Of a stretch of DNA of 64,000 bases, positions 13,901 to 62,913 are shown one piece after another. The notes beneath the pieces were generated by a model. That model ran no database searches, was not told the origin of the DNA, and saw only the letters and a program-made list of their open reading frames with translations. The stretch comes from Lepidodermella squamata. Taxonomy: Eukaryota; Animalia; Gastrotricha. The stretch spans positions 992,001 to 1,056,000 of the forward strand of contig JBLDXI010000021.1 of the NCBI GenBank assembly GCA_047495785.1, written 5' to 3'. The first letter of the stretch is position 1, and every line of letters begins with the position of its first letter. Made by a program: the position numbers and the translations under genes.

Positions 13901-16900
13901 TCAAGTGATTCTTCAATAGCCTGGGACTCATCGACGAATAAGCGCTACTCCGGAACAGTCATGATGATCATGCGAAAGTCCATTTTGAATCTACCAAATA
14001 CGGACACAAAAGTGTTGAGCACAAATCCGCTTGTATTACTGCACGAGTGCAAACACACGTATCAGCAAATATCGGGGGATAGTTTCCGCCTTAATATAGG
14101 AATGCTAGGCATATACGCTGGGGAGGACCTAGTATGCCAACGTAAGAAACTAGTCCCAGTTTTTTCTCCATATTCCTAAATTTTATGTACTTAAGCTTAT
14201 CCTGAACCGCAAGACTGCTCTTACATGCAATTGAAAGATGACACTTATCAATCAATGACCTATGATTCACTGTATTCAAACGATCTGAACTTTTTCACCG
14301 CCTATTGTGACATGAACACCATGGGTGGAGGTTGGACTGTTATCCAACGACGGATCGACAACTCTCAAAGTTTCCAGCAGGATCTAGATTCCTACGAGTC
14401 CAGTTTCGGAGCGGCTCATGCTAATTTCTGGATTGGGACTAAGGCCATTCGATCCCTGACCCAATCTGCTGATTACGAGTTACTAGTGGAGGTGCGAAAA
14501 GGCGACCTGTACGCCTTTGCTCTATACGATAGCTTCTATACGACTGGAGATACAAATATACTGTCAATTAGCGGCTATCAATCGTGCTCGACAGCCGGCG
14601 ATTCCTTGAGCCAACTCAAATCACAGCCCTTCGTTTTCGATTCATGCGGCCTCGGGTCTTGGTGGTTCAAGTACCAATCTAGCTGCTACCCTCTCCAATC
14701 TTCACTTAATGCCCCTTACAGCGCAAGCTCTTGTGAAAAAGGTATATTCTGGTCGACTTACAATGCTTACCCCTCTTGCTCTCAACTTGATCGGACGGAG
14801 ATGAAAATTCGACGAAAAACTGATCATGGCTACTACATAAAGGTGGCTAACTACTCGTGTGACCAGCCAACTATTGCCACGATCTCTCTCGCGACAGCAA
14901 CCCCGGTTATTGAGTGCCAAAAGGCCTGCACGTCCTATTCTGGAAAGGATGCACCTTGCGTTGTAGCAGTGACGAATCGTGTGGATCAATGCCTTCTCAA
15001 AGCGAAACAGTGCAGTCCGGGCGGATCGAAATCTGGTCAAGTAGACCAGAAGTTCGACACATACTATAGAATGGATAATTGTGACTACATCTCGAACTGT
15101 GGTCCGCCGCCCTCAATGTTCGGAGCCACTTCTCAGATCGTGTCGATGCCCACACAAATGGCCATCAACTACACATGCAGGCCAGGGTTTCAAAACTCGG
15201 CATTCCAAGGTGACTCAACCCTCCTTACCTGCTCCGGGAAGTACTGGAGTGGAAAGTGGCTTGACTGCCGTACCCTTTGCGGTGATCTGCCTTCGATGCC
15301 GAATGCCACGCTTGTCTCGACAACAACGGAAGATGGCGTAATCACGATGGTGTACACTTGCAATGATGAGTTCGACTACATATCAGGCGATTTGACTAGA
15401 ATTTGCGCTAAGCCCTATGGAAACGGCTGGAGAGGCGAGGAAGTTGTCTGCGTTTCAACACGATGCCCTGCGCCGCCTAACCTTTCGCATGGCTGGGCAA
15501 ATTACACGCGACCCCAAGTCATTGCTGATCGAACGAAACGGGGTACAGTGTGGAACTACACGTGTGACAGCGGTTATCTCTTCGGGAGTAATCTTCAGAA
15601 GTCCAGCTTGATACAATGCGGGGATGAACGGAAGTGGGTGCCAACAACACCTGGGACTTGCATTCGTAAGTTTAATCTATAGCCCGTCCCATTTAAGACA
15701 CATTGTCACTCGTTAGTTTTATTAGCCCCTCAACCCTTCAGAAGTTTCTCATGCCTCTAATTAGGGCAAAAGGTGACGACGTAGTTGGTGTAAGCTTTGC
15801 TCTGGCAGCTATAGGTCGAGGTTCCATCGTCGTAGGCGAACTGAAAAACAGGGAGTTAGCGAATATTAAGCTCGATCGAATACTTAAATTCTTACAGAAT
15901 AAGCGGTGGGACAGTTATCCTTGAAGAACTTGGGGTAGTTGGACGGCCAGGTTCTCGGATCGCACGCCTTCTGGTCAGGACTTCCGCACTTGGCGTTCAA
16001 GGGCGAGCAGTTGTAGGTACCACGGCAGCAATACTGGTCAGTGTTGAATTTGGCACAAGCGCTAAGACAGGCGATAACACGTCCATCTTTGCTTGTCATT
16101 TGCAGCTCCTTGGGGCAATTCTTCCTCAGATCGACTGAACAGCCACACCATTGGCACAGGCCGACATTAGCGTCGTAAGTTCCTGTAAAAAAGAGCAGTG
16201 AGGAAAGTGAAAATCGACTGGGTGAAACAAACCTGCGACTGGCTCCATGGAAATCGGGATGGTTGAGCCGTCGACGTAGCTGATGTCGAAGACGTCGAGG
16301 GTGTTCGGGCCCTCGGCGTTGAGTTCAGCCAAAGACGTAACCTCACCAGTCGCTCCGTTGCACTCCTTCATATTACCGCAACGGCCAGTTTCGCAATTCA
16401 AGTTGCCGTTGTTGTCAAGGGTGCAGTTGGTACGGGCCCAGATGCGACCAGACAGGAATCGCCCGCCGAGGTCAAGACAGGTCTTCTCACCAGCCTTCAT
16501 CAACCAACCTCCGTTCTTCGGCTGCGGGTCCTGGCGACGGAAAGCCGCGGCCCAAACCTCGTGTTTGCAGTTGTTGATGACAGTGATACGGTACTGGCTC
16601 GTCGTGACGGGGCACGCGGCAATCGTGGAGGACGGCGGGCGGGGTGTGGTTGTCGGCGGCTTGACAGAGTTGTCGGCGAATCCGCAGATCTGGTCCTGAT
16701 CAGCTACGGCGTTAGCGTTAGCCTTGGTCGCGCCGCCCTTCTTCATCCAGCAGGTTCCACCTTGGTAGTTGTTCCAGGTGTAATGGGTGCAATCCTTGGT
16801 CGTGTAGCAAGTATAGGCGCAGTATTGTTTAGCGCTCTTCGTATTGCTCAGATCATTGCCTGAAAAGTCACAACCCGCTGCGAAATTCCCGGTCCATGTC

Positions 16901-17683
16901 AGACCAGCCGCCTGGGTAGTATGAGCGAAGAGGGCTGTCGCGAAAATAGTTATAATAGAGTGCATTTTTTCAAAGGTCGAGAGAAAAGTCGTGTGAAAAA
17001 TGGTGGGTAATTACTGCGTATTTAAGCCGTTCCGCTTCGTCGGGTAATTCCGACCCCGGGAATGAAAGATATTTGCCCTTCCGGATTTTATTTACTTAAC
17101 GCCATGTCTGCCCATATTCGCGTTTTCGCTGCTAACCGGTGGTTATTCAGCTGCCTTCTGTGCTCTCTAGAAATTTCAGAGATGAAACAAATTATGGTCG
17201 GAGATCATAATGCCCAAAAAGTTGGGTCAATCTAGGTCGCTTCATTCGCTCACGATGAAAATATGTTATTTCATTCCCATTTTTTGTCAGCATTCAGTTG
17301 CACCAAACCGAGCAGTTTTGACAATGTGGCGACAAATCCTACGCTGACAAATGCTTCAAACATTTTTGAATGGGAGTCAAGCATCTACTTCGAGTGTCTT
17401 AGCGAGATGGTTCTGGATCCTCTCGGCTGGGACAGCAATGTCACGATTTCCTGTGTTGGCAATCAAACTTGGCTCATTGTAAACTACGTCGGTCCGGACG
17501 GACCTTCGCCAAAGACGTGGCTTCCAACTAGGTGTACAGGTAACCCAGAAAAGGGAACGGGGATGAGGATGATTAAAATTGAGGTCAACAACGCCATAAA
17601 ATGTGGCACCACTGGTCGTGTAGCTTAATTCAGTTGCGTATTTCTGTTCAGCTTCGCGCGGGGAGCTTTTTAAGGGCGACTGA
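1937..17683 (+). CDS. Giant multi-exon secreted mosaic protein: signal peptide, ~12 EGF, 8 C-type lectin, 3 F5/8C (discoidin), 4 fibrinogen-C, PAN, ~5 sushi/CCP
   Basis: Signal peptide [20 protein letters not shown]. CxNGGxC..CxCxxGWTG repeats at 2030-4377; CTL motifs (WIG, FICE) at 4655-9490; WIQVDF/WYQVNF/WQVDF discoidin motifs at 9600-11360; GGGWTVxQxR..GGWW fibrinogen domains at 11530-14820; CCP repeats at 15100-17540. The splice junctions I checked are in phase. The last exon ([10 protein letters not shown], ~17652-17683) is tentative. Confidence 0.85.
5670..5790 (+). repeat. Coding ACN-rich low-complexity repeat (Thr/Pro mucin-like linker)
   Basis: Encodes [36 protein letters not shown] between lectin domains. 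Confidence 0.9.
6920..7075 (+). repeat. Coding ACT/ACA/ACC repeat (second poly-Thr linker, split by an intron)
   Basis: actactactacaacaaca and accaccacaactact arrays between lectin domains 4 and 5. Confidence 0.85.
15757..16965 (-). CDS. Secreted PAN/Apple + thaumatin-like protein (PR-5 family), 3 exons, nested antisense in intron 15666-17290 of the mosaic gene
   Basis: Signal peptide; PAN_4-type [16 protein letters not shown]...GTCWMK; Pro/Thr linker; thaumatin motifs [34 protein letters not shown]...[12 protein letters not shown]|FAYDD..TYSC...VTFCP*. Two short GT-AG introns. Confidence 0.95.
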
Positions 17684-54979: not shown

Positions 54980-57339
54980 ATGTTGGAGATATTAGCTATT
55001 ACGACGCTGATGCTACCATCCATTTTATTGGCAGCCGAGCAGCAGTCTTTTAAACTTTATTCAGGTAAAAATTCACTTCGCCTAATTTTTGTATGCAAAT
55101 TTTCGCTTTTTTTCGTAAGATTTCGGTTGGGCAGCAACGTGTAGCGGTGGCAAGAAACAGAGCCCGGTTAATATCGATACATCCAAAGTTGAAGTCGACC
55201 CTGATCTGCAAGATGATCCACTCATCTTCGATAACTACTCCTGGAATTCGGTATCTGGAAACTTGACCAACGACGGCCTAACTATTAAATTCACAATTGA
55301 CGACACGATTGATGTAAAAACTCGCCCGAGAATCAACGGCGGCGGTCTTGGACAGTTTCCTTACGTCTTCAACCATCTTCAACTGCACTGGGGTAGGTTT
55401 GAGGTGCTTCTCTCGAAGAGAATTGAAAATATTTATTAACCCAGGTAATTCATCGTTTGCCCCAAGTGGGTCGGAACATACGATTGACGGCCAGGCTTCT
55501 CAGGCTGAGGTTCAATTCATCCATTACAACAGCAAATATCAGTCATTTGAGGTTGCCAGCAACAACTTTTCTGATGGTGTCGCTGTGATTGCATTCCTAA
55601 TCGAGACTGTTACTGACCCTAACAAAGTCACTACAGACTACACTCAAATCACCAATCTTACATCGCAAATTACAACTGTTGGTAGCACTGGTAAGTAATA
55701 ACCAACTGAAATTGTGGGGTCTAATAACACATTATTGTCAAGTTTCGACCTCACTGGATTTCGGTTCCCTTGTTCCATACTCAGCTCTCGCTAGTTCGGC
55801 TCGTTTTTACCGATATGGAGGCTCTTTAACCGCCCCGCCCTGCAGAGAGGTAGTGAACCTTTCAGCTTTGTATTTAGCAATTTAAAATGTGATCTCTCAA
55901 GGTGGTTACCTGGACTGTTTTCCAAGACAAAATACAGATGATGCCGAATGTATTGGATGATCTTCGCAAAGTTTTGGCTAATATCGAAGACGGAGATTCT
56001 AGCCGTGTTGTAACCATGGTTAACAACTACCGACCAGTTCAAAACTTGAACGGACGCGTTGTCACTAGCAACCAAGGCAATGATTCATCGATCAGTGGGA
56101 ACTCATCGGTCCCTGTCAGCCGAAATAGAACATCTATCACGACTACAACTCAAGAACCAGTTACATATCCTTGGGATTATTCTGGTCAGTATATTAAAAT
56201 TTGAATTTGAATTAATTGAATTGATTTTAATTTTTGAAATTGTATGAAAATTCAATTTTTTCCGCAGATACATCGGCTTGGAATGAATCGAGTAAAACTT
56301 GTTCAGTTGGAAAGCGGCAAAGTCCCATCGATATCTGGACCCACACCGCAGTCTATGATTCAAAACTGGCTAGTGATCGGTTGATTTTCGATCGATACAA
56401 CGGTCAAATCGGTGGCGAATATGCGAATGAAGGCTCAACTGTCAAGTTTACCATTGACAAGTCAATTTCGGCTGACAAACGGCCTAGAATCTACGGCGGT
56501 GGGCTTGGCGAGAAGGGTTACATCTTCGAGCAATTCCACCTTCACTGGGGTAAAGTGTCGAAAGGACCTGGCTCGTGCATGGGTGCGGAGCATCTCATAA
56601 ACAGCAAATCAGCACCGGCTGAAATTCACTTCGTCCACTACAACGCAAAGTACAAATCACTAGCGGAATCTCTCGGCTATTCAGATGGCCTAGCAGTTGT
56701 TGGTTTCTTCCTCGAAACTGTGGTCGACCCTAGTCTGGTGAAAAGCGACTACGAGCAGGTCACTAATTTGACCTCGCGAGTGCGTCGGGCTAGCAATAAA
56801 AGTAAGCGATGAATTATTACTAGACGATTTTATTACTTTATTATTTCGACTTTTTAGCTGGCACTAAATTTGACTTCGCAAAGCTGATTCCTTCGACGGC
56901 TTCGTCAGGCAAGGGTGTCTACTACCGTTACGATGGATCACTGACCACGCCACCTTGCAGTGAAGTCGTGACTTGGACTGTTTTCGAGGAGGCTATCCCT
57001 GTCCTAGCGTCCAGCCTTGACAGCCTTAGGGAGGCCACGAAATTCGTCAAAACTGATAATGGCTCAGATTCCACCCAAAAAATCACGATACCTGTTGAAC
57101 TGAGCAACAACTATCGCCCAGTTCAACAGCTGAATGGTAGAGTCGTGAAAACGAACTACCCACCCGGTTCTCGGTGGAATGGAGAAGCTAATACGAAAGA
57201 TTCGGGCAAAACGGCTGCTGGCTCTAACGCTACAACTCCCGCAAGCCAAGCTGATGCCGATGCTGTTAAGAAGAACAGCGCGATCAATATTCAATTCAAC
57301 GTAGCATTATTTATCGTCCTGATCTCGATTTTTTATTGA
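54980..57339 (+). CDS. CA12: double-domain alpha-CA (acatalytic domain 1, intact domain 2), GPI-like tail
   Basis: Domain 1 has NHLQLHWG/EVQFIH/GSLTAPPC, then a Ser/Thr linker ending PWDYS|. Domain 2 has QFHLHWG/GAEH/EIHFVH/GSLTTPPC. Confidence 0.9.
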
Positions 57340-57968
57340 AAAATTGGGAATTAATGACATTTTTAGCTAATTTATTGTTAAATTAATTGAAGAAATTTAA
57401 TGTTGTTTCAAGTATATCTTTTCACAGTTTTATCGGTGATTTTTGGAGCCGCCTTAATATTTCAGATTGTCGATAGTTTTTGTGTTAGTAAAAAAATCAT
57501 TAATCGAGAAACTTCCTTTTTACGTAAAAAACAATCCTAGTGGTGTTTCAACCTGAATGAAGAGACAGCTATCTGTCTACGAGAACGCGACTCATCCAAA
57601 ATGTTGCTATGGTCGCCATGCCAACAGTACCAACGATTTCCGATTAATAAAATTGCAATTTCCCCGAGGTGTCTTCAACCCTAAAAATGGCGACAGTTAC
57701 TATCTGCTTCATTGAATTATTGATGATCGAGGCGCAAGGTAGATACCGGCCGTCACTATTGTTGTAGTCAACGGCGACATGTGGACGCGAGGTGGGCAAT
57801 ACCATGAGTAATAGAAATCATATAGTGGCGAAATTCGATATCTAATTAAGTTCCGCGTGTGCGCATCAATAATCGTCGGTTATTTTAGCAACACGCCGGT
57901 GCCTTGGTGAATAAGAGCGCTTCATCGCAATACCTGTGTTACAGATTTCAGCCACTTTATATCACAAA

Positions 57969-60900
57969 ATGCTACTTCCAGTTTTTATCGCATTTCTTAG
58001 CTTATCCGCGGAGTCTGTTGAGTCCGCAGGAAGTGGGAGTTGGGGTTATTCAGGTAAAAATTAGCCCTTTAATTAAATAATTCCATTATAATAAAATTTC
58101 CAGATGCGGACAGTTGGGACCAAACTTGTAGCGATGGCAAGCGGCAGAGTCCTATCGATATCCGAACCAACTACGTCGTAGGCGATGCAAGTTTGGCAGC
58201 TGATCGGCTCATCTTCGACCGATATATCAACCAAACTCTCGCGGGAAATTACGTGAATACCGGCAAAACTGTTCAATTCACGATTAGCAGCTCCATTGCG
58301 GCGTCGCGACGGCCCCGAATTTACGGCGGGGGCCTCGGCGCCCAGGGCTACATCTTCGAACAACTCCACTTTCATTGGGGCCGATATTCGTGGGCTTCTT
58401 ACGGGTCTGAGCATTTGCTCGATGGCAATGCTTACCCGGCTGAAGTTCACCTGGTTCACTACAACAGCAAGTACGCGTCGTTTTCAGAGGCTGTTAAAAA
58501 CCAAGATGGCCTAGCTGTTATCGGATTTTTCTTCACCTCGACGACTGATCCAAAGGATATTGATACCGATTACACCCAAATCACCAATATGACGAATCAA
58601 ATCGTGGTCGAAAATGATAAAGGAGGTATGGATCGATTTTTCCTGAATTTTTTGGATTTTTTTATTTCCATTTTCATAGTGCCAATAACTATCGATTTCG
58701 GCAAGCTGATTCCTGGTTCTGCTAGAGCTGGGACCGGGAAATACTTCCGATATGACGGGTCATTGACTACCCCGCCATGTATTGAAGTAAGGGAACACAA
58801 ATTTATCGATTTATCGGCCCTAATTTTGCTATTTAAGGTTGTGACATGGACCGTTTTCGAGGAATTAGTGCCGATTCTCGGTGGGGCGTTGGATGACTTG
58901 CGGCGAGCCACGTGGACCGTGTCACCCTCCGGCCGTGATGATGAGACATGGGTCGAATCGATTGAGAATAATTACAGGCCCGTTCAGCCTATCAATGGCC
59001 GTGTCATTAAAATGAACCGACGCCCGCCGGCCGAAAAATACTGGGACTATTCGGATACTTCGAAATGGGCTGATATCAACCCGGTCTGTGAGACTGGCCA
59101 ACGCCAGAGCCCTGTTGACATTCAAACGCGATTTGTTGCGGCGGACACGGCACTGGCGAGTGATCGACTGGTTTTCGATCGATGGAACGCGTCTTTTACG
59201 GGCAGCTATGCTAACAACGGCAAGGGCGTGCAGTTCACTATCGATTATTCGGTCAGTGCTGATAAAAGGCCTAGAATTTACGGCGGTGGGCTTGGGTCAG
59301 ATGGCTACATCTTCGAGCAATTTCACATTCATTGGGGTAATATTTCATTTTCTCAAATTTTTCAAAATTTTAATTTTTTGAAATTTTAGGAAATTCTTCC
59401 CGACCGAATAATCCAATCGGAGCCGAGCATTTTATCGATGGTCGTTCAGCCCTGGGCGAGATTCATTTTGTCCACTATAACAGCAAATACGGGTCAATTG
59501 GAGAGGCGATTGGCAATGATGACGGTCTCGCCGTAATCGGGTTTTTCTTCGAAGTTGTAACCGATCCGAATTTCGTGAAAACCGACTACATTCAAGTGTC
59601 CAATCTCACCTCGAAAATTATTCAAAGCGGCTCGAGCAGTATGATGAAATAATTATTAATTTGGTAAAATATTCTGGTAATTTTTCCCTAGCTCAAGCGA
59701 CATTCAATTTCGGGAAATTTTTACCTACATCGGCTTCGGTTGGTTCAGGAATTTTTTACCGTTACGACGGCTCGTTGACAACCCCGCCATGTGCCGAAGT
59801 CGTTACTTGGACTGTTTTCGAGGAAAGAATCGCCATTCTGGCTTCGGCCTTGGATGATTGGAGGAAAACTACGACAAACAAGCGAACAGTCTACACGAGT
59901 AACGTGACCACCGTAGTTCCGATCACCAACAATTTTCGAGAGATTCAAGAGCTGAATTCGAGAGTGATCCGATCAAATCGACTGCCGCCTGGTGCTGTCA
60001 CATTCCGGCCCAGTTCTACAACTTCGACGATCAGGACTACAACAACTCGCCCGGCCGGAACAACCAGAACCGTCAAAGTCGTTAAAATTCCAGAAAAACC
60101 GTGGGATTATTCGGGTGAGAATTTGCTGTATAAACAGGGCATCTACCTGATATATAAAATCGGGAAATTTCTTAAATTATAAAATTCAAGCTTAATTTCT
60201 CAAGTTTCTTCAACATTCGTCCCAACTTTAAATTCTAGTTGTCTAACGTTGGCCGTAAATTTTATACATTTTTATAAATTATTCATAAATTTCAAAAAAT
60301 TAGGAAAAATTAGAAAGAATTCTCAAAATTTAATGGAAAATCAGGAATGCCCACCATTGCTTCATTTAAATCAGAAGCAAAGGCTGTTTTAACCTTCGAA
60401 AAACATTATTTGTCAAAAATAACCCTTCGTTAAGGTCTCTTCTCAATTAATTGAATTAGTTAATCTTCAATTTTTAGACCAAGATTATTGGGCCGAGTAC
60501 AACGAAGTTTGCAGATCAGGCAAGCAACAAAGCCCGATCGACATTCAAACAAGAACCGTGCAAAGCGATTCGCAACTCGCGAAAGACCCGTTATTTTTCG
60601 ACCGGTGGCAGTCAGTCAGCGGTGATTACTACAACAACGGCTATGGCACTCAATTCACAGTTAACAAGTCCATCCCAGTCGATAAACGGCCTCGAATCTA
60701 CGGCGGCGGTCTCGGCGCGAAGGGCTACATTTTCGAGCAGTTTCACATTCACTGGGGCAGGTATGCGAAACCGGGCGCGTGCATGGGTGCTGAGCATCAA
60801 ATCAACAGTCGAGGTGCGGCTGGTGAAATTCATTTCGTCCACTACAATTCGAAATACAAGTCTTTTACGGAGGCGATTGATTACGCCGACGGCTTGGCTG

Positions 60901-61517
60901 TAGTCGGGTTCCTTCTCGACGTAACAACCGATGCGAGTCAGGTTAAAGTCGACTACGATCAAGTGACAAATTTAACCCAACAAATTTCAATGCCTCTTGC
61001 AAAAGGTAAAAAATATCCACCTTAATTGAAATTTGACAAAAATTCCGAATTTCTCGCAGTGCCTGCTCAGTTCAATTTTGGCAAATTGATTCCACCCTCG
61101 GCGATCAAGCCCGGAATTTTCTATCGCTACGACGGGTCACTAACTACCCCGCCATGTATTGAAGTCGTGACCTGGACGGTTTTTGAAGAGCGTGTCCCAC
61201 TTTTAGCCCGAACTATGGCAGCTTTGCAATCAGCCCTGGCCAATGTGACCATCAACGACGCTGTTTCGAACGATACCTACAACATTCTTATGCCGATAAA
61301 TGACAACTTCCGAGATCTTCAGAGCTTGAATAAAAGAGTTGTTAGGACGAATCGGGTCGAACCGGTGACTACGACACCAGCGGCGCCTCAAGCAGTGGTC
61401 GCGGTCATGAAGAACGAAACGACAAATTCGACAAAATCTAATGCGCCGAGTCAGCCTGCCTGTAATTATTATTATCAATTCGTCGCTCTTCTTCTAGCGG
61501 CATTTTCTCTTATTTAA
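57969..61517 (+). CDS. CA13: triple-domain alpha-carbonic anhydrase, all three Zn triads intact, GPI-like tail
   Basis: One signal peptide and three consecutive QSP/HxHWG/ExHxVH/GSLTTPPC/NxR sets joined in frame (RRPPAEKYWDYS; Thr-rich linker ending PWDYS|). Confidence 0.9.
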
Positions 61518-61696
61518 AGGCGTAAGAGACATCTTTCATCCTTACCTGTGATACCCCTTGAATATTTTCCTGCTGTCTGAATAATTTAAAATAAATAACG
61601 GAATTTTATCAGATTTATTCAAAAAACTTGGCAAGGGTTTTCAGATATATCTATAGCTAGTTGAACATTTCAAGGTTTTGTGAGCTGTATCGCTGG

Positions 61697-62913
61697 CTAT
61701 AACAAAAATTTAGCAAACAACGAGGAAAAAATAATGACCAGAATTTTGGCTTTAGATTGTAATTCTGCTGAGTTTGCCTTCTTTGCTAATAGCAGAGAAT
61801 TCGTGTAAATTTTTCGAAGGCTGACATTTTGAATGGGCCGATAACTGGCAGCCATCGGCGTTTTCCCGCCATCCGACATCGATTTAGCGAAAAAGCTAGT
61901 CGCGAAAACTTTGATTTGATTCGGATTGGCATGAATCGCATTGCCAAAAACAGTCCATTGCACGGATTCGTAACACGGCGGTGCGGTTAATGAGCCGAAA
62001 TACCGGTAATATTTCGCGGTCGATTGAATCGAAGTCGACGTAACAGTGTTGTTACATTTCCCAGCTCGTTGCCACGCTTTGAAGGGTAGTAATTGGCTCA
62101 AATTCAGGTAGGTTTGAGCTGAATAGTCTTCGAGTTCAATTGCCGAAAAATTGCTGATTAATTCTGAATAATCAGCCTCGAATTCTCCAGTTCCTGTGTG
62201 GACTGGCTCGACCATGAAGGCAACAATTGCTAGGCCATCTTGTTTATTCACGCTGTTCTTATAGGATTTATAAGCCTGGTTGTAGTGGACGAATTGAATT
62301 TCGAGCGGCGTCGCCCAGTACTCGTCGCCTTGTAGATGCTCGGAGCCGCGCGTGCATGACCCCTCGTTGATCACGTCGCCCCAATGAAAGGCAATGTGGT
62401 CGAGGATGTACCACGAATTAAGGGTGCTGCCTGAAATTCGAGGCAAAAGTCGCGTTTCGTTAATTGCATTTGCAGACAAGGTCCACGTTACTGTATAATT
62501 TTTTTAAATTTTCAAAAAATTAATTAAAAAATCAAAATTAAAAACCGATTCTCCCATTGTTCTGCAAAACTCCTGGGAACGACCGTGACTCATCCGGGTA
62601 GTTGTCGAACCGCAGAGGGTCCTTAACCAGCTTGTCGCTGTATTCCGCATGGGCGGGTGCGAGATAAATTGGCGATTGGTACTTGCCATTGCCGCATAAA
62701 GGGTAACTCAAAGGCCACGCACTGATATCTGTAATTCACCAAATTTCGTGAGCGCAATGTAGTGTGATCGTTTATTTTACTTGTATAAGTCCAATGAGGA
62801 TCCACTGGTCCGATAACCGTGTTGTTATATTGGCAATTGATCGGAAAAATTAATAAGGACAGAGTAAATAGCAGTGAATCATAGCGCTGATTGATCAGTG
62901 TAGAATAAATCAT
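61697..62913 (-). CDS. CA14: acatalytic alpha-CA-related protein, GPI-like tail
   Basis: DHIAFHWG, GSEH, LEIQFVH, GSLTAPPC, ASYRP. Confidence 0.9.

What the first reader, a model, noticed from the sequence alone, without database searches (positions are those of the whole stretch)
57969..61517. Triple-domain, apparently fully catalytic GPI-type carbonic anhydrase (CA13)
Seen: one signal peptide, three complete domains (about 58040-59015, 59040-59985 and 60100-61355), each with HxH, E106, H119 and GSLTTPPC, and one C-terminal anchor. Domain 1 runs into domain 2 within a single exon with no stop, so the fusion is not a gene-model artefact. Known: two-domain alpha-CAs are described from Dunaliella and the giant clam Tridacna; I do not know of a characterised three-domain animal alpha-CA. 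Inference: tandem domains raise catalytic density per membrane anchor.
Basis: partly seen in the sequence, partly recalled or inferred. Interest (0 to 1): 0.85.

Follow-up and report, generated by a model that had tools for sequence, protein, structure and literature searches.

The report
Three-domain membrane-tethered carbonic anhydrase gene
This is a real, expressed and conserved animal gene that strings three complete carbonic anhydrase enzyme units on one chain with one export signal and one likely lipid-anchor signal. Similar three-unit proteins are already present, unstudied, in public databases for snails, oysters, crabs and plankton, so it is interesting but not unique.

Summary
An 8-exon, 956-residue model (57969-61517, + strand) encodes a signal peptide, three full alpha-carbonic-anhydrase (PF00194) domains that are 52-58% identical to each other, and a hydrophobic tail at the very C-terminus. 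Each domain keeps the three zinc histidines, Glu106, Glu117, Thr199/Thr200, Gln92 and the Cys23-Cys203 pair.

"Fully catalytic" needs a caveat: the proton-shuttle His64 is Lys in domains 1 and 2 and Tyr in domain 3.

An RNA-like public run splices introns 2, 3, 5, 6 and 7 exactly as modelled. This includes the 363-nt intron that joins domain 2 to domain 3, which has no read depth inside it.

A diverged second haplotype differs at 32 synonymous and 2 conservative sites among the 34 listed coding differences. All 12 listed indels fall outside exons.

Three-domain alpha-CAs with the same layout already exist as uncharacterised database entries (Physella, Scylla, Pinctada, a metatranscriptome contig), along with 5- to 7-or-more-domain forms. 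I found no paper describing one.

A domain tree shows that this fusion arose independently inside a lineage-specific tandem array.

I rate it a new member of a known kind, of moderate interest. The scan has no earlier report of this gene on other DNA.

The parts
57969..58053 (+). Exon 1: start codon, signal peptide (MLLPVFIAFLSLSAESVESA...) and the first residues of domain 1 (WGYS). It ends at a phase-1 GT donor.
   Evidence: hydropathy peak at residues 1-17. The layout matches exon 1 of the neighbouring gene at 54981. The RNA-like run X1 does not cover it, so this exon rests on sequence only.
58038..59023 (+). Alpha-CA domain 1 (aa 24-300; exons 1-4, introns 1-3). Q92/H94/H96 at aa 115-119, E106 at aa 131, E117/H119 at aa 142-144, T199/T200 at aa 232-233, Cys37-Cys236, Lys at position 64.
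   Evidence: The alignment to human CA III places the Lys on CA III Lys64.
59024..59038 (+). Very short domain 1-domain 2 junction (PPAEK) inside exon 4, with no intron and no stop.
   Evidence: X1 contig record 1 (58888-59119, 0 differences) crosses it.
59039..59990 (+). Alpha-CA domain 2 (aa 306-587; exons 4-6, introns 4-5). All zinc and gatekeeper residues present, Cys322-Cys521, Lys at position 64.
   Evidence: The intron 5 joint, and loose ends that fit an intron 4 splice, are.
59991..60098 (+). 36-residue Ser/Thr-rich linker (14 S/T of 36), probably an O-glycosylated stalk, between domains 2 and 3.
   Evidence: Four synonymous-only differences in the second haplotype fall here, at aa 595-601. 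A homologous S/T-rich linker + PWDYS + phase-1 intron sits between the two domains of the neighbouring gene.
60115..60477 (+). Intron 6 (363 nt, GT..AG, phase 1), at the same position as intron 1. It contains the in-frame stop at 60180-60182 that would end the protein if the intron were retained.
   Evidence: The X1 joint 60113->60477 skips 363 nt with GT..AG ends. The bridging contig is 238 nt and has 130 nt on the exon 6 side. Depth is zero in bins 60132-60379.
60099..61358 (+). Alpha-CA domain 3 (aa 624-904; end of exon 6, exons 7-8). All zinc and gatekeeper residues present, Cys640-Cys837, Tyr at position 64.
   Evidence: The alignment to CA XIV places the Tyr on the shuttle His. The intron 7 joint is.
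61359..61517 (+). Thr/Pro-rich stalk with two N-glycosylation sequons (aa 905-940), then a 16-residue hydrophobic tail (YYYQFVALLLAAFSLI) that ends the protein, then the stop codon. The shape is that of a GPI-attachment signal.
   Evidence: No GPI predictor was available. The tail has no cytoplasmic extension.

Best explanation
One expressed gene encodes a secretory-pathway protein of 956 residues. It has a cleavable signal peptide and three tandem alpha-class carbonic anhydrase domains on the same (extracellular) side. Domains 1 and 2 are joined almost directly, and domain 3 hangs on a 36-residue Ser/Thr-rich stalk. A C-terminal stalk and hydrophobic tail most likely direct GPI anchoring. Each domain has its own complete zinc site and gatekeeper pair, so each most likely hydrates CO2 and dehydrates bicarbonate by the ordinary zinc-hydroxide mechanism at the cell surface. 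Proton transfer runs without the classical His64 shuttle, as in CA III (Lys64) and CA V (Tyr64), so turnover is probably below that of CA II. The gene arose by duplication and in-frame fusion inside a lineage-specific tandem array of extracellular alpha-CA genes, independently of the multi-domain alpha-CAs of molluscs, crustaceans and tardigrades. Shown: the architecture, the residues, the splicing of five of the seven introns, and purifying selection. Inferred: enzymatic activity of each domain, GPI anchoring, additive activity, and the physiological role (surface CO2/bicarbonate/proton handling).
For: - **Gene model.** All splice sites are GT..AG and the CDS is in frame.
- **Domains.** There are three PF00194 copies, and all catalytic motifs occur three times. 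The pieces match solved CA XIV, CA II and CA III at E about 1e-21.
- **Topology.** Only the N- and C-terminal segments are hydrophobic, there are 12 N-glycosylation sequons, and each domain has a conserved Cys pair.
- **Transcription.** X1 has GT..AG joints at introns 2, 3, 5, 6 and 7 exactly as modelled, loose ends that fit intron 4, no depth inside intron 6 or upstream of the gene, and a contig across the domain 1/2 junction.
- **Selection.** The second haplotype in DNA run X2 has 32 synonymous and 2 conservative changes among 34 listed coding differences, spread over all domains, the linker and the tail. All 12 listed indels are non-coding, with a chance probability of about 2e-8.
- **Shared intron positions.** Introns 1 and 6 occupy the same position and phase, and so do introns 2, 5 and 7.
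- **Independent origin.** All window domains form one clade (95/91) apart from the mollusc and tardigrade multi-domain CAs. The five domains of this gene and its neighbour form a 99/97 clade.
Against: - No single molecule spanning all three domains was seen. The contigs are at most 238 nt, so one transcript is inferred from a chain of junctions.
- Exon 1 and intron 1 have no RNA coverage.
- X1 is only guessed to be RNA by its record; its behaviour argues for RNA.
- His64 is absent from all three domains.
- No GPI or signal-peptide predictor and no structure prediction could be run on the spliced protein.
- Only 40 of 161 haplotype differences were listed.
- The order of fusion events is unresolved. 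Intron and linker patterns pair this gene's domains 2 and 3 with the neighbour's domains 1 and 2. The sequence tree instead makes domains 2 and 3 sisters, and the AU test disfavours the domain 2 + neighbour domain 1 pairing (p = 0.018).
Confidence: 0.68

Rival explanations
1. There are two products rather than one. Transcripts retain intron 6 and stop at 60180-60182, giving a secreted, anchorless two-domain protein, and domain 3 is made separately or not at all.
For: Intron 6 is seven times longer than the other introns and holds an in-frame stop 66 nt after the donor. Contigs drop rare variants, so a minor retained isoform cannot be excluded.
Against: A contig joins 60113/60114 to 60477/60478 with GT..AG ends, at a depth similar to the flanking exons, and depth is zero in 60132-60379. 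Domain 3 has no start codon or signal-peptide exon of its own in the intron. Its first residues (PWDYS) are encoded at the end of exon 6. Domain 3 and the tail are under the same purifying selection as the rest.
Confidence: 0.05
2. The fusion is real, but not all domains are efficient enzymes. Without His64, one or more domains may be slow (CA III-like) or may serve mainly as a binding or spacer module, in an array where many copies have become pseudo-enzymes.
For: Lys, Lys and Tyr stand at position 64. Domain 1 also has Thr instead of Asn62. The neighbouring two-domain gene has a first domain with Gln at both His94 and His119. The C-terminal part of domain 3 scores best against the non-catalytic CA-like domain of RPTP-gamma.
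Against: Every zinc ligand, Glu106, Glu117, Thr199, Thr200, Leu198 (not the Phe of CA III), Val143 and Trp209 is kept in all three domains. Changes between haplotypes are almost all synonymous. From general knowledge, CA V with Tyr64 is still a fast enzyme.
Confidence: 0.2
3. The C-terminal hydrophobic stretch is a membrane-spanning tail anchor, or is simply retained, rather than a GPI-attachment signal.
For: No predictor was run. For the two-domain Tridacna enzyme, PI-PLC did not release the protein despite a predicted GPI site (PMC5879104).
Against: The 16 hydrophobic residues are the very last of the protein, with no cytoplasmic residues after them. They are preceded by small residues (S-N-A, P-A-C) and a polar stalk, which is the classical shape of a GPI signal.
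Confidence: 0.15

Closest known systems
Two-domain membrane-associated alpha-CAs of bivalves: Tridacna gigas tgCA (AAX16122, recovered here as P0009), T. squamosa DDCA, Phreagena okutanii MCACO2 (PMC5879104)
   Same: They have a signal peptide, tandem alpha-CA domains each with its own zinc site, a C-terminal hydrophobic segment with a predicted GPI site, and an extracellular-type CA sequence. The proposed role is inorganic-carbon handling at an epithelial surface.
   Different: They have two domains, not three. They belong to a separate clade in the tree, so their origin is independent, and the organism here is not a mollusc. Their two domains are more diverged from each other (37% for MCACO2) than the 52-58% seen here.
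Uncharacterised predicted three-domain alpha-CAs in databases: Physella acuta XP_059163193 (835 aa), Scylla paramamosain XP_063871834 (806 aa), Pinctada imbricata KAK3090265 (821 aa), and JGI contig protein P0152 (839 aa, an uninterrupted ORF on a 2679-nt contig)
   Same: They have three full PF00194 domains, each with HxH and the other motifs. Physella and P0152 also have an N-terminal signal-like segment and a hydrophobic C-terminal tail.
   Different: Identity to this protein is only 34-37%, and the mollusc-type proteins included in the tree (Physella, P0152) fall outside the clade of this array. None has been studied. The genome-derived ones are automatic gene models that I did not verify with RNA.
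Dunaliella salina duplicated alpha-CA (Dca)
   Same: It arose by internal duplication of an alpha-CA domain in one polypeptide and is extracellular.
   Different: It has two domains, is algal, and is hydrophilic with no membrane anchor (PMC5879104).
CDCA1 of Thalassiosira weissflogii (zeta-class)
   Same: It has three tandem CA repeats, each with its own active site. [quoted passage not shown]
   Different: It belongs to an unrelated fold and class. The repeats are 80-82% identical. It is a diatom protein, uses cadmium or zinc, and is not membrane-anchored.
Human CA IV (GPI-anchored), CA III (Lys64) and CA V (Tyr64)
   Same: The protein shares the extracellular-type Cys23-Cys203 pair and a GPI-style C-terminus with CA IV. 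It has Lys at position 64 as in CA III, and Tyr at position 64 as in CA V (from general knowledge).
   Different: These are single-domain enzymes. CA III's low activity also depends on Phe198, whereas all three domains here keep Leu198.

Membership tests
Alpha-carbonic anhydrase (PF00194) | Profile match above Pfam's gathering score over the whole domain | tested here: met
   Six exon translations match PF00194 at 56-145 bits (cut-off 27). Together they cover profile positions 2-254 three times.
Alpha-carbonic anhydrase (PF00194) | Zinc ligands His94, His96 and His119 | tested here: met
   HFHWG / HIHWG / HIHWG and EVHLVH / EIHFVH / EIHFVH are present in domains 1-3. They align with the same motifs in solved CA XIV and CA III.
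Alpha-carbonic anhydrase (PF00194) | Gatekeeper pair Glu106-Thr199, plus Thr200, Gln92 and Glu117 | tested here: met
   G[SA]EH, GSLTTPPC and Q-x-H-x-H are present in each domain.
High-activity alpha-CA (CA II-like) | His64 proton shuttle | tested here: not met
   The residue is Lys in domains 1 and 2 and Tyr in domain 3.
Extracellular alpha-CA (CA IV / VI / IX / XII / XIV type) | Signal peptide and the Cys23-Cys203 disulfide pair | tested here: met
   There is an N-terminal hydrophobic segment. Cys pairs are 37/236, 322/521 and 640/837. Signal-peptide cleavage was not predicted with a dedicated tool.
GPI-anchored alpha-CA (CA IV / XV type) | C-terminal GPI-attachment signal: small omega-site residues, a polar spacer, and a hydrophobic tail at the extreme C-terminus | tested here: inconclusive
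   The shape is present...KSNAPSQPACN followed by 16 hydrophobic residues that end the protein. No GPI predictor or experiment was available.
Multi-domain membrane-associated alpha-CA (Tridacna tgCA / DDCA kind) | Two or more complete alpha-CA domains in one reading frame and one transcript | tested here: met
   Domains 1 and 2 lie in one exon. Domains 2 and 3 are joined by an observed splice.
Multi-domain membrane-associated alpha-CA (Tridacna tgCA / DDCA kind) | Common descent with the mollusc multi-domain genes | tested here: not met
   All domains of this array form their own clade (95/91), apart from the Tridacna, Physella, P0152 and tardigrade domains. It is the same kind by architecture but has an independent origin.

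The most novel reading that the evidence does not exclude
Concatenation of catalytically equipped alpha-CA domains into chains of 2, 3 and up to 7 or more units is a recurrent, convergent solution in several animal phyla and in protists, and the literature has largely missed it. A 2018 review passage counted only four other two-domain CAs. This locus would then offer a natural series inside one array: single-domain genes, a dead-plus-live two-domain gene, and this all-live three-domain gene. That series could test whether chaining gives additive activity, avidity or channelling at the membrane.
Probability: 0.5. Interest if true: 0.45.

Novelty: new member of a known kind. Interest (0 to 1): 0.32.

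Why it matters
The gene shows, with splice and selection evidence rather than only a gene model, that an animal keeps three complete alpha-CA active sites on one probably lipid-anchored chain. This arrangement arose independently of the mollusc and crustacean cases. Two-domain forms occur in many invertebrate phyla, and forms with three to seven or more domains exist. The practical value is modest. The locus gives a clean system for asking whether chaining enzymes raises surface activity additively, as reported for the unrelated three-repeat CDCA1. It could also help explain why this lineage expanded extracellular CAs so strongly.

Tried and rejected
- **Separate gene for domain 3.** Rejected: there is no start or signal exon in intron 6, and the splice is observed.
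- **Assembly collapse of tandem genes.** Rejected: DNA run X2 covers the whole stretch in two haplotypes with no joints, and RNA contigs cross both domain junctions.
- **Conserved ortholog in another organism.**
  - The 1.84-billion-protein library holds no full-length relative above 42% identity.
  - Three environmental ENA contigs that carry the closest fragments (52-54% identity) each hold a single CA domain.
  - A metagenome scan with the exon that bridges domains 1 and 2 found nothing.
- **Naming the organism.** A Kv-channel exon from the window found only one unnamed ENA protein at 70% identity. The window is clearly animal (C-type lectin, fibrinogen-C, sushi, Kv channel). Other agents' guess of a rotifer was not tested successfully.
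- **Literature.** Phrase searches for three-, triple- or multi-domain alpha-CA gave no relevant paper. This is absence within an open-access library searched by phrase only.
- **Structure prediction of the full protein or a clean domain.** Not done.
- **Order of the fusions.** Intron and linker homology pairs the neighbour's d1-d2 with this gene's d2-d3. The tree conflicts with this (d2 and d3 are sisters), and the AU test gave p = 0.018 against d2 + neighbour d1 and p = 0.17 for d3 + neighbour d2. The question is unresolved; gene conversion or the long branch of the dead domain could explain the conflict.
Full report
**What is there**

Reading 57700-61800 and translating in three frames showed coding blocks separated by short AT-rich gaps with GT..AG ends. 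Joining eight exons gives a 2871-nt in-frame CDS of 956 residues. The exons are:

| Exon | Coordinates |
|---|---|
| 1 | 57969-58053 |
| 2 | 58104-58625 |
| 3 | 58680-58786 |
| 4 | 58838-59336 |
| 5 | 59390-59638 |
| 6 | 59692-60114 |
| 7 | 60478-61005 |
| 8 | 61060-61517 |

Six introns are 50-54 nt long. Intron 6 is 363 nt.

Every exon-sized translation matches Pfam PF00194 (eukaryotic-type carbonic anhydrase) far above the cut-off. Together the pieces cover the profile three times.

The three domains are aa 24-300, 306-587 and 624-904, or window coordinates 58038-59023, 59039-59990 and 60099-61358. They are 52-58% identical to each other.

Only two hydrophobic segments exist: residues 1-17 (signal peptide) and 942-956, the last residues of the protein. 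There are 12 N-glycosylation sequons and a Cys pair in each domain at the positions of the extracellular-CA disulfide Cys23-Cys203.

**Catalytic equipment**

In each domain I find the following residues, in human CA II numbering:

- Trp5 and Tyr7
- Gln92, His94, His96
- Glu106
- Glu117 and His119
- Val143
- Leu198, Thr199, Thr200, Pro201, Pro202
- Trp209

Alignments with solved structures confirm the register (CA XIV, CA II and CA III at E about 1e-21).

The one departure is residue 64, the proton shuttle. In domains 1 and 2 it is Lys, which aligns exactly with Lys64 of CA III. In domain 3 it is Tyr, which aligns with the His of CA XIV. The domains are therefore equipped for zinc-hydroxide catalysis but lack the classical shuttle. 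"Apparently fully catalytic" should be read as "probably active, rate unknown".

**Is it one gene product?**

The junction between domains 1 and 2 lies inside exon 4 with no stop, and a 232-nt contig of run X1 crosses it without a difference.

One public run (X1) is recorded only as a guessed RNA run, but it behaves as cDNA:

- It has no depth upstream of the gene or inside intron 6 (bins 60132-60379).
- It carries a poly-T loose end.
- It has GT..AG joints at exactly the modelled introns 2, 3, 5, 6 and 7.
- Its loose ends fit the intron 4 splice.

The intron 6 joint (skipping 363 nt) is carried by a 238-nt contig with 130 nt on the exon 6 side, at a depth like that of the flanking exons.

Domain 3 has no start codon or signal exon of its own. 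Its first residues (PWDYS) are encoded at the end of exon 6, just before a phase-1 intron at the same position as intron 1. The refutation test is therefore not met.

Three limits remain:

- The contigs are short, so a single molecule spanning all domains is inferred rather than seen.
- Exon 1 and intron 1 are not covered.
- Contigs cannot exclude a minor retained-intron isoform.

**Selection**

DNA run X2 carries two haplotypes at similar depth, one identical to the window and one about 6-8% different. I mapped the 40 listed differences onto the model:

- 34 are coding. Of these, 32 are synonymous and 2 are conservative (Ser216Thr, Ile820Val).
- 30 of the 34 are at third codon positions.
- They are spread over all three domains, the linker and the tail.

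All 12 listed indels fall in introns or outside the CDS, although exons make up 78% of the stretch. The chance probability of that is about 2e-8. Only 40 of 161 differences were listed, so this is a sample, but it strongly supports the frame and the function of the whole chain.

**Surroundings and origin**

The window holds a tandem array of alpha-CA domains from about 26 kb to 62.7 kb.

The gene just upstream (54981-57339) has two domains. In its first domain Gln stands at both His94 and His119. Its d1-d2 junction has the same build as the d2-d3 junction here: an S/T-rich linker, then PWDYS, then a phase-1 intron. Its first domain also shares with domain 2 here a phase-1 intron inside the Gly of HWG, followed by NSS.

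Within this gene, introns 1 and 6 share one position and phase, and introns 2, 5 and 7 share another. The fusion was therefore made at the DNA level from duplicated genes.

A maximum-likelihood tree puts all window domains in one clade (95/91), apart from the Tridacna, Physella, P0152 and tardigrade domains. The five domains of these two genes form a 99/97 clade.

The order of events is unresolved. Intron and linker patterns suggest an ancestral two-domain gene that duplicated, with domain 1 added later. The tree instead makes domains 2 and 3 sisters. An AU test disfavours pairing domain 2 with the neighbour's dead domain (p = 0.018) but not domain 3 with the neighbour's second domain (p = 0.17).

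**Comparison with what is known**

I ran an exhaustive HMMER search of 1.84 billion representative proteins with the N-terminal two-thirds of domain 3. It found no full-length relative above 42% identity. It did find many multi-domain alpha-CAs. I re-scanned the 150 best hits plus three extra cluster members (153 proteins) with a profile of the three domains:

| Full domains per protein | Number of proteins |
|---|---|
| 2 | 29 |
| 3 | 6 |
| 5 | 2 |
| 7 | 1 |

The three-domain entries are:

- Physella acuta XP_059163193 (835 aa)
- Scylla paramamosain XP_063871834 and KAK8394066
- Pinctada imbricata KAK3090265, which has three HxH-bearing domains (its first domain was matched in two pieces, so it is not among the six counted above)
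- a fish model
- two unnamed JGI proteins

Physella and the JGI protein P0152 have a signal-like N-terminus, three HxH-bearing domains and a hydrophobic C-terminal tail. P0152 is an uninterrupted 839-codon ORF on a 2679-nt contig, which looks like a transcript. A 1513-residue protein with five full domains lies on a 4734-nt contig.

Two-domain forms come from a copepod, lobster, crab, scallop, giant clam, chiton, freshwater mussel, land snail, nemertean, centipede and tardigrade.

They are not common, but they exist in at least three phyla with the same layout.

In the literature searched, only two-domain CAs are described. Koh et al. 2018 state that besides the Tridacna enzymes only four other two-domain CAs were known (PMC5879104). 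No paper on a three-domain alpha-CA turned up. [quoted passage not shown]

**Mechanism and verdict**

The most likely reading is a surface-tethered enzyme with three independent alpha-CA active sites, working by the usual zinc-hydroxide mechanism. Domains 1 and 2 form a tight pair. Domain 3 sits on a probably O-glycosylated stalk, and the whole chain is held by a probable GPI anchor.

- Shown: the architecture, the residues, splicing of five of the seven introns, and purifying selection.
- Inferred: activity of each domain, the anchor type, additive activity, and the physiological role.

It is a well-supported new member of the multi-domain membrane-associated alpha-CA kind. It evolved independently, it is of moderate interest, and it is not categorically new.

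**Housekeeping**

- No step had to be referred.

Noticed in passing
window 54981-57339 (+): The neighbouring two-domain alpha-CA gene has a first domain with Gln at both His94 and His119 (NHLQLHWG, EVQFIHYN) and an intact second domain. Its domain junction (S/T-rich linker, PWDYS, phase-1 intron of about 80 nt) is built like the d2-d3 junction of the three-domain gene. Its first domain shares the HWG|NSS phase-1 intron with domain 2 of that gene.
   Followed up: partly
window 61492-62729 (-): A convergent alpha-CA gene lies on the minus strand (domain hits 61793-62729). Run X1 has a poly-T loose end just before 61492, inside the last codons of the three-domain gene. This suggests that the neighbour's polyadenylated 3' end overlaps the 3' end of this gene.
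   Followed up: no
window 58165-61506, run X1: Six 'opposite strands' joints occur in X1 contigs, each about 100-155 nt apart (for example 58165/58285, 58332/58442, 60699/60803, 61389/61506). They look like fold-back artefacts of the cDNA library or of contig building, but I did not explain them.
   Followed up: no
window 16126-16965 (-): An ORF combines a PAN-like module with a thaumatin-family domain (PF00314, E = 1e-26) in an animal genome. Nearby are C-type lectin, F5/8 type C, fibrinogen-C and sushi ORFs, and a Kv-channel exon whose only database relative is an unnamed ENA protein at 70% identity.
   Followed up: no
L002:70-4611 (protein P0095) and protein P0046: Public metagenome-derived contigs encode chains of five full (1513 aa) and at least seven (2170 aa, partial) alpha-CA domains, most with HxH and Thr199 motifs. 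The 1513-aa one is an uninterrupted ORF with signal-like and hydrophobic ends. I found no paper on such long alpha-CA concatemers.
   Followed up: partly
window 57900-61600, run X2: Two haplotypes at roughly equal depth differ by about 6-8% at this locus. They collapse into single contigs where they are identical. This points to a highly heterozygous genome or one carrying homeologues.
   Followed up: partly
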